From assembly GCF_033153115.1 (NCBI RefSeq), contig NW_026889750.1, positions 28,954,001 to 29,018,000 of the forward strand: a DNA stretch of 64,000 nt. The letters run 5' to 3'. The translations under genes and the position numbers were made by a program. Below are positions 38,464 through 41,140 of the stretch, in pieces. Below the pieces are notes generated by a model. The model was given only the letters and a program-made list of their open reading frames with translations. It was not told the origin of the DNA and did not search any database. The DNA comes from Saccostrea echinata (taxonomy: Eukaryota). Position 1 is the first letter of the stretch, and the number at the start of each line of letters is the position of its first letter.

Positions 38464-39734
38464 AAATCGGCAATGAAAGAAATGCCGAAGAACAAAATTG
38501 TAAAGCTCCCGAACTTATTGTCTCAAATACACTTTTTCCCCTGTAAATTACAATATTTACTCTGTGCTAAATAATTTATGTGATGAATGTAACAATGTTA
38601 ATTGTACGTGTGAACACTACTTGTACACCCCTAAAATGCTCAATTAAAGTGTTCAAATGCTCAAAACAAAAACATGTTTAATATTTGTGCTCATGAAGGA
38701 GTACAAAAAATTAGCCTTACTAAGAATGTTACACAGATAAGTCCTCAGAATAATTTAATTCAGAAAGAAAATTCACCCAAAGAGACATGCACACAAAGTA
38801 ATGTTACTAGATTTGGACTGGTTAAAAGAGGTTTACGTTTTGGAAACTTAAATGTATGTCATCTAATACCCAAAATTGACGAAATCAAATTGTTGCTTCA
38901 AGACAAACATTCTCTTGATATTTTAGGTCTCTGTGAAACATTCTTAAATGATAATTTCTGTGACTCGGGTTTAGATATTAGTGGATTTGCTTTTAAGAGA
39001 AAGGATAAACGTTTTAAGTCAGGTGGGGGAATTGTGTATATTTCAAATGATATTACTTATAAACGTAGAACAAATTTTGAAGTAAGTAATATTGAAACTG
39101 TTTGGCTAGAAATCAATCTAAAAAATTCTAAACCTATTTTTTACTGCTCTGTCTACCGTCCACCATCTGCCCAGTCCTGCTTGGTAGAGGATTTAGCAAG
39201 GAAGATAAACCTCGCCTCCTGCTGTGACGACAGTAAAATTCTTATTACAGGTGACTTCAACATTGATTTACTCAAAGACACCCCCCCCCCGCGATGCTGG
39301 ACATCTGCTTTAGAGGAATTTGGACTAACACAAGTAATAAATGCACCCACTAGAGTCACTAACACTTCTTGTACGCTCATTGATCACTTTTATACTACCA
39401 TGTCAGATAACATATGTGAAGTAAATGTACCCCCAATATCCTTATCTGACCATTTCCCTATTTGTGCAACCCGGAAATCTAATTGCATGCAACGTAGAAA
39501 CAAACACATAGAAATTAAATATCATGATTTCAAAAATTTTAACGAATCAAATTTCTTGTCTGACTTAAAAAATGAAAATTTTGATAGTCTTGCAGAATTA
39601 CACGATCCTAATGACATTCTTGATACTTTCTATAAAATGTTTAATAATGTCCTTGACAGACAAGCCAAAGTTAAATGTAAAAGAGTGTGGTAGTGTTAGA
39701 TACATGGCTTTCTACTAGCTTGGGCTAGTGGGTT

Positions 39735-39807
39735 AACCCTTTAGCTCAATTGGTAGAGCACTGGACTGGCAAGCCAGAGGCCCCGGGTTCAATCCCCAGT
39801 AGAGGCA
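39735..39807 (+). promoter_or_regulatory. tRNA-like Pol III cassette inside the LTR; present in all four LTRs
   Basis: A box TAGCTCAATTGG, B box GGTTCAATCCC, perfect D stem GCTC/GAGC, anticodon arm with GGC, degenerate acceptor stem. Confidence 0.85.
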
Positions 39808-40670
39808 CATACATGTCTCTGTTACATTTTGGCGCCCATGTAGGGACACAGTGGCTTTGAGTGCAGACTGGAGACGAGTGTATGGTGTATGGTACGTTTA
39901 CGGATCCATGGAGATCGTCAGGCCGTCAGTGAGGCATAAACTTACCTGTGATGACTGTGTTTATCCACCCAAGTAACAAACTTTGATCCGCGCCTAACAA
40001 GTGACATTCTGAAGGATCATCAGTGACACCGGTGTAGTGCATTTGAGACTGCATGCAATATTTAATCTGTGATATTTATCTTTACCAGCTGGTGAGTTAC
40101 ATGCATATTTATAAACTGTAGATTTTAGAACTTGGTGCACCGTTAGAGTTGATTTTGTATATATATTTTTTTTTCTTTGTAAAGAATTTAATATTCACGA
40201 TCGATCAGTGGTGTAATTTTTTTTGAATAGGCCTACATTTTGCTAGCTAGTAATATTTTTTTATAGATCAAAGTTGATCATTGTCTGTCTGTTCTGTCCG
40301 TCATATCTGGGTTTGTTATTATTATTTTTTTATTGTGCACATATTGGTATTAGAACTTTAAGATGTAAGAAGAACTACAGTGAGAGTGAGAGAATCGGTA
40401 AGTTGTGTAATTAACAGTGCACATATTTCCCTCATTCCATTCCCAGTGTTAATTAGTGGTTAATTGCTATTTCTTTCATCTGACATTTTACAGACGAGAC
40501 AGTAAGACTGCAACCGTTGAATTTACTAGTTGTATTGGTCGTATTCAAGTAAGTTGATCTGAGTTTGTCGTGATATTCTGTGAGGTCATTGTTGCTACAG
40601 TGTTATCAGTGGTTTTGTAATTGTCTGGTAGTTAATCCCAAACACCCTATTACCCAAAATCCCACCGCGG

Positions 40671-41140
40671 ATGAGGGAAATATGTGCAGATCATTTGGAC
40701 ATATCAGCTATTCAAGATAAAGACCCTACTGTTTCTTTCTGGAAAACCCAAGTGGAATTAGGAACCAGACCAGACAGGGATTCTTTGAACACTGAAAATG
40801 ACTTGATTTTCTACAGAATTTTTTCCAAATTTAAGGTCAAAGGAAACATCTTAATGAGAGAAGTGAAAACAGAAGATGGCATCATCCATCAATCTGTCAT
40901 TCCCATGTCAACCATTCCAACTGTATTACATCACCTACACAATAAGATAAGACAAGTGACCAGAGAGCTGAATTAGTTAACATCCTAACATCCCAGCCAC
41001 TGGAACTTGTATGCATGGATTTCCTAACATTAGAACCAGCAAAGGGAGGAGTACAAAACATCTTAGTCATTACAGACCATTTTACCCGTTTCGCTGTGGC
41101 AATACCAACTAGAAATCAGACAGCCAAAACAACTGCGGAA
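40671..41140 (+). pseudogene. Ty3/Gypsy integrase remnant (partial H2C2 region plus start of the rve core)
   Basis: QDKDP...QSVIP.STIPTVLHHLH and QPLELVCMDFLTLEPAKGGVQNILVITDHFTRFAVAIPTRNQTAKTTA. Confidence 0.85.

What the first reader, a model, noticed from the sequence alone, without database searches (positions are those of the whole stretch)
39686..41140. A tRNA-LTR of a TRIM heads a Gypsy leader and integrase remnant: a possible parasite-helper chimera
Seen: LTR1 differs from the TRIM LTRs at only 3 of 141 positions, but it is not followed by the TRIM internal segment. It is followed by a different Lys-type PBS (TGGCGCCCATGTAGGGAC, 39830-39847), ~820 bp of unrelated leader and Gypsy integrase fragments. 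All of this lies inside one AGAG-duplicated insertion. Established: TRIMs encode no protein and need a helper, and the second strand transfer of reverse transcription occurs through the PBS. Inference: either the TRIM strong-stop DNA jumped via the shared Lys PBS onto a co-packaged Gypsy cDNA, which would identify the helper family, or a formerly autonomous Gypsy itself has tRNA-derived Pol III LTRs.
Basis: partly seen in the sequence, partly recalled or inferred. Interest (0 to 1): 0.85.

Follow-up and report, generated by a model that had tools for sequence, protein, structure and literature searches.

The report
Scrambled TRIM–Gypsy hybrid retrotransposon insertion
One insertion in this (probably oyster) genome is a dead, one-off hybrid stitched from a tiny tRNA-bearing parasite retrotransposon (Helenus) and shuffled pieces of a full-size Gypsy element, and it points to that Gypsy family as the parasite's long-sought helper.

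Summary
One insertion, 39686-41905, is flanked by AGAG and sits inside a LINE ORF. It begins with a TRIM LTR that runs straight into non-TRIM sequence.

The TRIM is a known kind: a 141/125/407-bp Helenus (TRIMp3) element, close to the published oyster families Helenus-3_SaGl and Helenus-1_CGi.

The foreign part comes from a Ty3/Gypsy family with at least 13 genomic copies. That family's own LTRs are about 1.05 kb and unrelated to the TRIM LTR. This refutes the "autonomous Gypsy with tRNA LTRs" reading.

The Gypsy part is a scrambled mosaic, not a decayed element. It contains 838 nt of leader, a 6-nt filler, an 18-nt inverted leader copy, two integrase pieces, and an 86-nt piece that jumps 7.6 kb back to the 5' region. 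An inverted TRIM unit and a normal TRIM follow.

Breakpoints have 0-8 nt of microhomology. The TRIM-side breakpoints fall on natural ends of reverse-transcription intermediates.

TRIM and Gypsy share LTR tips and a 4-bp TSD. They also share the same three PBS variants, each an 18/18 match to a host tRNA-Lys gene.

Best reading (about 0.65): an aberrant multi-template cDNA made in a particle holding both RNAs, then integrated once.

Read support could not be checked. This is a new member of a known kind, of moderate interest.

The parts
39682..39685 (+). Left copy of the 4-bp target-site duplication AGAG, in the host LINE ORF
   Evidence: the host frame ...KCKRV / RVKSET... is continuous only if one AGAG is a duplicate.
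39686..39826 (+). LTR1, a Helenus TRIM LTR (141 nt) with a tRNA-like module at 39737-39807
   Evidence: 3/141 differences from LTR2 and LTR4, all C>T; Rfam tRNA, 42.6 bits.
39827..40664 (+). Gypsy-type TTT spacer, PBS (39830-39847, 18/18 to a host tRNA-Lys(UUU) isodecoder) and the first 838 nt of the Gypsy 5' untranslated leader
   Evidence: 94-97% identity to 13 genomic Gypsy copies; 8 private substitutions in about 780 columns.
40665..40670 (.). 6-nt filler CCGCGG with no identified template
40671..40688 (-). 18-nt exact reverse complement of leader 40418-40435 (a templated strand-flip insert); overlaps short similarity (GAAATA, GCA) with the native start of the integrase piece
   Evidence: I10, 18 nt, 100%.
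40686..40948 (+). Integrase piece A, matching Gypsy pol residues about 835-922 (up to the first His residues of the zinc-binding domain)
   Evidence: 88% aa identity.
40949..41141 (+). Integrase piece B, matching pol residues 961-1024 (start of the rve core). It is frame-shifted relative to A after a roughly 118-nt deletion with 1-nt microhomology
   Evidence: rve; 95% aa identity.
41136..41226 (+). Piece X: 86-91 nt that in intact copies lie about 165 nt downstream of the leader piece, so this is a backward jump of about 7.6 kb. It is joined to piece B through the 6-nt microhomology CGGAAG (41136-41141)
41227..41232 (-). CCAAAA, the reverse complement of TTT spacer plus TGG, i.e. the start of a PBS/tRNA copy attached to LTR2
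   Evidence: (I2 arms extend 9 nt past the LTR).
41233..41373 (-). LTR2, a TRIM LTR in inverted orientation, identical to LTR4
41374..41498 (-). TRIM internal domain, inverted (PPT...PBS of tRNA-Lys(CUU) type plus TT). It abuts the 5' tip of LTR3 with only TGT/ACA shared
   Evidence: (I1, 269-nt arms, 99%).
41499..41905 (+). A complete canonical TRIM: LTR3 (41499-41639), TT+PBS+internal+PPT (41640-41764), LTR4 (41765-41905)
   Evidence: at least 422 candidate copies in the genome; same 141/125/407 layout as Helenus-3_SaGl.
41906..41909 (+). Right copy of the TSD AGAG

Best explanation
The 2,220-bp insertion is a single, dead-on-arrival recombinant cDNA. It was made inside one virus-like particle that held RNA of a Helenus-type TRIM (a 407-bp non-coding LTR element whose LTR carries a tRNA-like Pol III promoter module) together with RNA of an autonomous Ty3/Gypsy family.

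Reverse transcriptase switched templates at least six times between TRIM and Gypsy RNAs and nascent cDNAs. The product still carried TRIM LTR tips at both ends. The integrase therefore inserted it once, giving the family-typical 4-bp duplication (AGAG).

Inferred order, read along the bottom strand:
1. A normal TRIM cDNA is made (LTR4-internal-LTR3).
2. An end-to-end jump from its finished U3 tip lands on the 3' end of another TRIM minus-strand DNA.
3. That strand is copied through PBS-internal-PPT-LTR2-TTT into the first bases of the attached tRNA primer.
4. A jump onto Gypsy RNA at piece X follows, then integrase piece B, then piece A.
5. An 18-nt flip on leader minus-strand DNA follows, then leader 838 down to the PBS.
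6. The strand is completed on a TRIM LTR.

The Gypsy-type TTT next to both LTR1 and LTR2 is explained if priming began on the Gypsy PBS and the strong-stop DNA switched to TRIM RNA within the shared 8-nt tip.

Shown: the anatomy, the parent families, the junction sequences, and the shared tips, TSD and PBS repertoire. Inferred: the order of the switches, that they happened during reverse transcription, and co-packaging, which is what would make this Gypsy family the helper.
For: 1. **Parents identified.** The leader, piece X and both integrase pieces map to the same 13+ Gypsy loci, in their normal order there. Only the window has them rearranged and joined to a TRIM LTR.
2. **Different LTRs.** Gypsy LTRs are 1.04-1.05 kb and unrelated to the TRIM LTR.
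3. **Short or absent junction homology.** Homology runs from 0 to 8 nt: CTGTTACA 8 nt, CGGAAG 6 nt, ACA 3 nt, T 1 nt. There is also a 6-nt filler and an 18-nt templated inversion.
4. **Breakpoints on natural termini.** The three TRIM-side breakpoints coincide with natural ends of reverse-transcription intermediates. These are the LTR/spacer/PBS border (J1), LTR plus spacer plus the first 3-6 nt of the tRNA copy (J5), and the U3 tip against spacer+PBS (J6). A DNA-repair rearrangement has no reason to choose those points.
5. **One TSD, intact tips.** A single 4-bp TSD bounds the whole insertion, and LTR tips are intact.
6. **Uniform age.** Private changes are 8 in about 780 positions of the leader and 9 in 814 positions of the TRIM units, about 1% each (for the leader; the TRIM count is by eye).
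7. **Family-level link.** The LTR 5' tips match at 12 of 16 positions and the 3' tips at 8 of 8. Both families make 4-bp TSDs. Both carry the same three PBS variants, each 18/18 complementary to a host tRNA-Lys gene: two UUU isodecoders and CUU.
8. **Not a collapsed join.** Every Gypsy segment in the window is 3-8% different from every other genomic copy.
Against:
- The chimera is a single locus. Recurrent TRIM x Gypsy junctions could not be sought exhaustively. The pattern search is demonstrably incomplete: one search returned 2 hits where one search shows at least 14.
- Strand flips, fillers and microhomology are also hallmarks of replicative DNA repair (MMBIR/FoSTeS).
- Apart from the PBS and a loosely similar PPT region, the TRIM shares no internal sequence with the Gypsy leader. 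No shared packaging signal is therefore visible.
- A sister Gypsy family has the same LTR tip and PBS. The shared features mark a clade, not one family.
- The TTT at J1 and J5 could come from a rare TRIM variant or from slippage.
Confidence: 0.65

Rival explanations
1. Post-integration DNA rearrangement. An ordinary TRIM, or a TRIM tandem, inserted at AGAG. Later a break inside it was repaired by microhomology-mediated or replicative repair (MMBIR/FoSTeS/NHEJ). The repair copied or captured Gypsy DNA or free Gypsy cDNA fragments and duplicated TRIM parts in inverted orientation. Co-packaging would then not be implied.
For: Fillers, 0-6 nt microhomologies, an 18-nt templated inversion and inverted duplications are classic for such repair. 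The locus is unique. Capture of retrotransposon cDNA at chromosomal breaks is established in yeast (my own knowledge, not checked here).
Against: Three breakpoints sit exactly at LTR/spacer/PBS borders, that is, at ends of reverse-transcription intermediates. This scenario leaves both occurrences of the Gypsy-type TTT spacer next to a TRIM LTR unexplained. All parts show the same roughly 1% private divergence (for the leader; the TRIM count is by eye).
Confidence: 0.22
2. Assembly artefact. Repeats and inverted repeats (150-nt and 269-nt arms) led the assembler to join reads from different loci.
For: No reads could be laid. The region is rich in near-identical repeats and palindromic arms.
Against: The Gypsy segments are 3-8% diverged from every other genomic copy, so no donor locus exists in the assembly. 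The repeated TRIM units differ from one another. The junctions carry fillers and microhomology rather than clean repeat-mediated joins. The host LINE frame and TSD fit perfectly around the whole block.
Confidence: 0.06
3. Remnant of an autonomous Gypsy whose genuine LTRs are the tRNA-bearing 141-nt LTRs. This would be a Pol III-LTR autonomous element, and the TRIM would be its deletion derivative.
For: LTR1 is directly followed by a Gypsy PBS and leader within one TSD.
Against: All 13 other leader copies are preceded by the 1.05-kb LTR. Full copies have matched 1.05-kb LTR pairs (97-100% identical) and their own 4-bp TSDs. The leader contains many TTTT runs, the first directly after LTR1. These would stop Pol III. 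The Gypsy pieces are out of order.
Confidence: 0.02

Closest known systems
Helenus / TRIMp3 (Kojima 2024, PMC10886601), specifically Helenus-3_SaGl (Saccostrea glomerata) and Helenus-1_CGi (Crassostrea gigas)
   Same: The TRIM has 141-nt LTRs with a tRNA-like module and a 125-nt internal domain, 407 bp in total, with a 4-bp TSD, a tRNA-Lys PBS and a GGAGGGGGACAA PPT. The published Helenus-3_SaGl internal domain differs from copies here at about 4 of 125 positions. That count is by eye from the supplement text.
   Different: The paper inferred a Gypsy helper only from loose PBS similarity and aligned this PBS to tRNA-Lys-CTT with a gap. Here the main PBS is an exact 18/18 match to host tRNA-Lys(UUU). 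A specific Gypsy family shares the PBS, the tips and the TSD, and a physical TRIM-Gypsy hybrid exists.
Complex LTR-retrotransposon insertions made by abnormal template switching (Sabot & Schulman 2007, PMC1950507)
   Same: A composite daughter element is formed from two parent sequences during reverse transcription and inserted as one unit within one TSD.
   Different: That work describes plant (Triticeae) elements sharing an LTR. Here an animal non-autonomous Pol III-type TRIM is fused to scrambled internal pieces of its putative helper, with strand flips and a backward jump.
Retroviral helper/defective-genome recombinants arising from co-packaged RNAs (reviewed in PMC5086612; VL30-MLV type recombinants from my own knowledge)
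   Same: Recombination by copy-choice between two different RNAs in one particle. Junctions fall at short homologies and at strong-stop transfer points.
   Different: This is not an infectious retrovirus. The product is non-coding, scrambled and single-copy.
biv-TRIM (Satovic et al. 2019, PMC6934838)
   Same: A TRIM of bivalves for which tandem and rearranged copies are reported. No autonomous partner was found.
   Different: biv-TRIM lacks a recognisable PBS and is not reported to carry a tRNA module. It is a different family.

Membership tests
Helenus (TRIMp3) | Two short LTRs that each contain a tRNA-like sequence | tested here: met
   four 141-nt LTRs, 97% mean identity; Rfam RF00005, 39.9-42.6 bits, gathering score 29. 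ARAGORN does not call them as tRNA genes, as expected for degenerate copies.
Helenus (TRIMp3) | PBS complementary to a tRNA 3' end just after the 5' LTR, PPT just before the 3' LTR, and no coding capacity | tested here: met
   host tRNA-Lys genes give 18/18 matches; the element is 407 bp.
Helenus (TRIMp3) | 4-bp TSD in animal families | tested here: met
   AGAG here. 14 of 29 other copies gave identical 4-bp flanks even with crude boundaries (examples).
Helenus (TRIMp3) | Transcription from the internal Pol III promoter | not testable with these tools
   Indirect evidence only. 27 of 29 copies have no TTTT on the sense strand, while 27 of 29 have AAAA, at equal A and T content.
Ty3/Gypsy (Metaviridae-like LTR retrotransposon): the donor of the foreign pieces | pol domain order PR-RT-RNaseH-INT, and gag with a zinc knuckle | tested here: met
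   on a natural full-length copy (L073): Asp protease 52-152, RVT_1 409-570, RNase H 643-772, Integrase_H2C2 906-962, rve 975-1072. The gag-like ORF has PNMA and zf-CCHC hits.
Ty3/Gypsy | Matched LTR pair with TG...CA ends, and a short TSD | tested here: met
   LTR pairs of 1043-1051 bp, 97-100% identical, with TSDs TATG, TAGT and TTTT.
Template-switch composite insertion (Sabot & Schulman type) | Two parent elements fused and bounded by a single TSD | tested here: met
Template-switch composite insertion (Sabot & Schulman type) | Fusion arose during reverse transcription, not after integration | tested here: inconclusive
   Breakpoints fall on ends of reverse-transcription intermediates, and age is uniform. 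These favour the feature. No direct test is possible from one assembled locus.
Helper-parasite pair (this Gypsy family mobilises this Helenus) | Shared cis signals for integrase and priming (LTR tips, PBS, PPT, TSD length) | tested here: met
   5' tips match at 12/16 and 3' tips at 8/8. The same three PBS types occur in both families, and both make 4-bp TSDs. A sister Gypsy family shares the tip and PBS too.
Helper-parasite pair (this Gypsy family mobilises this Helenus) | TRIM RNA packaged and reverse-transcribed by the helper's proteins | not testable with these tools
   Supported only by the hybrid cDNA itself, under the best explanation.

The most novel reading that the evidence does not exclude
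The hybrid would be a molecular fossil of how a Pol III-driven TRIM is replicated. In this reading, Helenus RNA rides in particles together with the helper's own genomic RNA. Priming can start on the helper's PBS and cross to the TRIM within the 8-nt shared U5 tip, which would explain the Gypsy-type TTT at both LTR1 and LTR2. Both elements would continually rewrite their PBS from a common pool of three packaged tRNA-Lys species. Hetero-packaging with the helper genome, rather than an autonomous packaging signal, would be what keeps the parasite dependent on this Gypsy clade.
Probability: 0.2. Interest if true: 0.65.

Novelty: new member of a known kind. Interest (0 to 1): 0.48.

Why it matters
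Kojima (2024) described Helenus/TRIMp3 elements but left their helpers essentially unidentified. For this lineage the only evidence was a gapped PBS resemblance.

This locus, with the family comparison around it, names a concrete candidate: a Ty3/Gypsy family that looks young, with LTR pairs 97-100% identical. That family has the same LTR tips, the same TSD length and the same three tRNA-Lys PBS variants as the TRIM.

The locus also provides a physical hybrid, which is what co-packaging predicts. That makes the question of who mobilises Helenus directly testable in oysters.

The hybrid is a rare, well-resolved natural record of multi-step template switching by an invertebrate retrotransposon reverse transcriptase. 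It has no function of its own.

Tried and rejected
- **Other chimeras and head-to-head TRIMs by pattern.** The second hit (C54) is just an ordinary TRIM with the tRNA-Lys(UUU) PBS. The four extra hits are the LTR-end/PBS border of another Gypsy family read on the other strand. The pattern search is not exhaustive in this genome, so 'unique' means unique among what was scored.
- **Autonomous tRNA-LTR Gypsy.** Rejected.
- **Independent nested insertion of a Gypsy fragment.** Rejected. There are no Gypsy LTRs and no TSD around 39827-41232, and the flanks are two inverted TRIM LTR ends.
- **Nested insertion of the right-hand TRIM into an inverted TRIM.** Rejected. The 4 nt before LTR3 (CAAA) do not match the 4 nt after LTR4 (AGAG).
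- **PBS of the window leader as a mutated copy.** Rejected. It matches a second host tRNA-Lys(UUU) isodecoder 18/18.
- **TRIM internal domain as a deletion derivative of this Gypsy.** No similarity beyond the PBS and a weak PPT-region match.
I did not do this.
- **Earlier notes of the scan by words.** Nothing found.
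Full report
**1. What is there**

The block 39686-41905 lies between two copies of AGAG, inside the ORF of a LINE-like element. The upstream ORF ends ...KCKRV. The frame starting at the downstream AGAG reads RVKSETRPKW.... The host frame is therefore continuous only if one AGAG is a target-site duplication.

The block contains four copies of a 141-nt LTR: LTR1 (+), LTR2 (-), LTR3 (+) and LTR4 (+). Their mean identity is 97%. LTR1 differs from LTR2 and LTR4 at 3 positions, all C>T, and LTR2 is identical to LTR4. 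Each LTR holds a 71-nt tRNA-like module above Rfam's tRNA gathering score. ARAGORN does not call them as genes.

LTR3-internal-LTR4 (41499-41905, 407 bp) is a canonical TRIM. This family has at least 422 candidate copies in the 923-Mb genome.

**2. The TRIM is a known kind**

Kojima 2024 (PMC10886601) described tRNA-LTR TRIMs as Helenus (TRIMp3). They occur in pteriomorph bivalves with 4-bp TSDs. A Gypsy helper was suggested there only from PBS similarity.

The paper's supplement lists Helenus-3_SaGl with the same layout (LTR 141, internal 125, total 407, TSD 4). Its internal domain differs from copies here at about 4 of 125 positions, by eye. Helenus-1_CGi is a clear relative. The genome is therefore most likely an oyster.

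**3. Where the foreign part comes from**

The 838 nt after LTR1 have 13 other copies in the genome, at 87-97% identity. None of these is preceded by the tRNA-LTR. All are preceded by about 1.04 kb of shared sequence, which is the true LTR of a larger element.

Four natural copies were fetched whole. Their LTR pairs are 1043-1051 bp long and 97-100% identical. Their ends are TG...CA, with 4-bp TSDs TATG, TAGT and TTTT.

One copy was used as a yardstick. It has a gag-like ORF (PNMA, zf-CCHC) and a 1461-aa pol with protease, RT, RNase H, Integrase_H2C2 and rve, in Ty3/Gypsy order.

The 'autonomous Gypsy with tRNA LTRs' reading is therefore refuted. I built no consensus and compared natural copies only.

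**4. The Gypsy part is a mosaic**

The table maps the window on intact copies.

| Window coordinates | Origin |
|---|---|
| 39827-40664 | Spacer, PBS and leader positions 1-838 |
| 40665-40670 | CCGCGG, no identified template |
| 40671-40688 | Exact reverse complement of leader 40418-40435 (also, I10) |
| about 40686-40948 | pol residues 835-922 (piece A) |
| 40949-41141 | pol residues 961-1024 (piece B) |
| 41136/41142-41226 | Piece X |

- In intact copies, pieces A and B lie about 7.3 kb downstream of the leader.
- Piece B is frame-shifted after a roughly 118-nt deletion. Only 1 nt (T) is shared at that join.
- In intact copies, piece X lies only about 165 nt downstream of leader position 838. 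Reaching it from piece B is a backward jump of about 7.6 kb, through the 6-nt microhomology CGGAAG.
- After X comes CCAAAA plus LTR2 inverted. Read on the other strand this is LTR2 + TTT + TGG(TGC), that is, an LTR with a spacer and the first bases of a PBS.
- Next come the inverted internal domain (41374-41498) and LTR3. Its PBS+TT end abuts the 5' tip of LTR3, and only TGT/ACA is shared there (I1: 269-nt arms, 99%).

Only the window holds these joins. Every other locus matches the pieces separately.

**5. Family-level link between TRIM and Gypsy**

*LTR tips.* The TRIM starts TGTGGTAGTGTCAGAT and the Gypsy starts TGTAATAGTGTTGGAT, a 12/16 match. Both end in CTGTTACA, an 8/8 match. Both make 4-bp TSDs.

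*Spacers.* The spacer is TT in 27 of 27 TRIM copies. It is TTT (TTTT in two) in all 13 Gypsy copies.

*PBS types.* Both families carry the same three PBS types, shown in the table below. Each is 18/18 complementary to a host tRNA-Lys gene plus CCA.

| PBS | Host tRNA | Gene copies found | Seen in |
|---|---|---|---|
| TGGCGCCCACGTTGGGAC | tRNA-Lys(UUU) | 8 | 14 of 27 TRIMs exactly; 7 of 13 Gypsy copies |
| TGGCGCCCATGTAGGGAC | a second tRNA-Lys(UUU) isodecoder with compensated stems | 2 | The window hybrid, one Gypsy copy, one TRIM |
| TGGCGCCCAACGTGGGGC | tRNA-Lys(CUU) | 17 | Both TRIM units of the window, about 8 other TRIMs, 4-5 Gypsy copies |

The PBS type changes between TRIM copies that otherwise share internal variants (L044 against L059). 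This is what is expected if the PBS is re-copied from whichever primer tRNA was used. That behaviour is established for retroviruses (my own knowledge). It implies that both families draw on one primer pool.

*Limits.* Beyond the PBS and a loosely similar hairpin+PPT region, the TRIM and the Gypsy share no internal sequence. A sister Gypsy family has the same LTR tip and PBS. The signature therefore marks a clade. The hybrid points to one family within it.

**6. Mechanism**

Three observations favour formation during reverse transcription.

First, the TRIM-side breakpoints coincide with natural ends of replication intermediates.
- J1 lies at the U5 tip/spacer/PBS border.
- J5 lies after LTR + spacer + 3-6 nt of the tRNA copy. 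That is the shape of plus-strand strong-stop DNA, or of a plus-sense copy of a minus strand with its primer still attached.
- J6 joins the finished U3 tip of a complete cDNA to the spacer+PBS end of a minus-strand DNA.

Second, the Gypsy-type TTT occurs next to a TRIM LTR twice, at J1 and J5. One event explains both: priming on the Gypsy PBS, followed by an early switch to TRIM RNA within the shared CTGTTACA.

Third, all components are equally old. The leader has 8 private substitutions in about 780 compared columns. The six TRIM units together have 9 private changes in 814 nt (counted by eye). Both figures are about 1%.

The product kept TRIM tips at both ends and was integrated once.

It could not propagate. 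A TTTT run follows LTR1 directly, and many more follow in the leader. By contrast, 27 of 29 TRIM copies have no sense-strand TTTT. This fits Pol III transcription of the TRIM.

The order of the switches and the co-packaging are inferences.

**7. Rivals**

*Post-integration repair (MMBIR/NHEJ, or cDNA capture at a break).* This would also give fillers, microhomology and flips. It does not explain the breakpoint positions or the two TTT spacers. I give it about 0.22.

*Misassembly.* This is unlikely (about 0.06). No other genomic copy is closer than 97% to any Gypsy piece. The repeated units differ from one another. The junctions are not repeat-mediated.

- There are no reads.
- No more genome loci could be fetched.
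- Pattern counts in this genome are lower bounds (compare).
- The comparison with the published Helenus sequences was by eye on the supplement text.

**9. Verdict**

The TRIM is already known as Helenus. The hybrid is a new member of the known class of template-switch composite insertions.

Its value is that it nominates a specific helper for a Helenus lineage. It also exposes a shared three-way tRNA-Lys PBS polymorphism. The earlier scan notes s1-803208 and s1-803402 describe the TRIM and the inverted repeat on this same window. Both were re-checked here.

Noticed in passing
L002-L014 and L040-L068; host tRNA genes at G000:C2:25144133-25207156, C9:36551759, C45:4178935, C62:2772339, C54:40109952-40125909: The Gypsy family and the Helenus TRIM both carry the same three PBS variants. 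Each is an 18/18 match to a different host tRNA-Lys gene (two UUU isodecoders and CUU). The PBS type flips between closely related TRIM copies, as if rewritten from the primer at each cycle. Kojima 2024 aligned this PBS to tRNA-Lys-CTT with a gap, but the exact match is to tRNA-Lys(UUU).
   Followed up: yes
L040-L068 (29 TRIM copies); window 39827: 27 of 29 TRIM copies have no TTTT on the sense strand, while 27 of 29 have at least one AAAA, at equal A and T content. The TRIM spacer is always TT (giving TTT before GG). The Gypsy spacer TTT gives TTTT, a Pol III stop. This fits Pol III transcription of Helenus and makes the hybrid untranscribable in that mode.
   Followed up: partly
G000:C54:40109952-40125909: There is a tandem array of at least 14 identical tRNA-Lys(CUU) genes spaced about 1.22 kb apart, all on one strand.
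   Followed up: no
L003 (G000:C23:9924612-9928444) and L004 (G000:C23:8777972-8781804); L017 (C36) and L018 (C5): The two C23 Gypsy loci behaved identically in every comparison and show no private differences, flanks included. L017 and L018 (the sister Gypsy family) are 99.97% identical over 3.1 kb. These could be recent segmental duplications, very recent insertions, or duplicated assembly.
   Followed up: no
window 38674-39693 and 41906-42160: The host of the insertion is a LINE-like element whose ORF is split by the composite. The upstream part (339 aa) looks like an endonuclease-type domain by eye. The downstream part continues in frame. Neither was classified.
   Followed up: no
window 39698, 39711, 39800 (LTR1) and 41622, 41624 (LTR3): All three private changes of LTR1 are C>T outside CpG. 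Both private changes of LTR3 are C>A. The numbers are too small to interpret.
   Followed up: no
G000:C1:11760237, C12:3365988, C30:9717227, C39:243313: A further Gypsy family (integrase about 70% identical in DNA) has an LTR ending ...CACTACTACA followed by TT and TGGCGCCC. This is another tRNA-Lys-primed relative whose tip resembles the TRIM's 5' tip read in reverse.
   Followed up: no
window 20325-20416: The only tRNA gene that ARAGORN calls in the window is a tRNA-Ser(AGA). It is unrelated to the finding.
   Followed up: no
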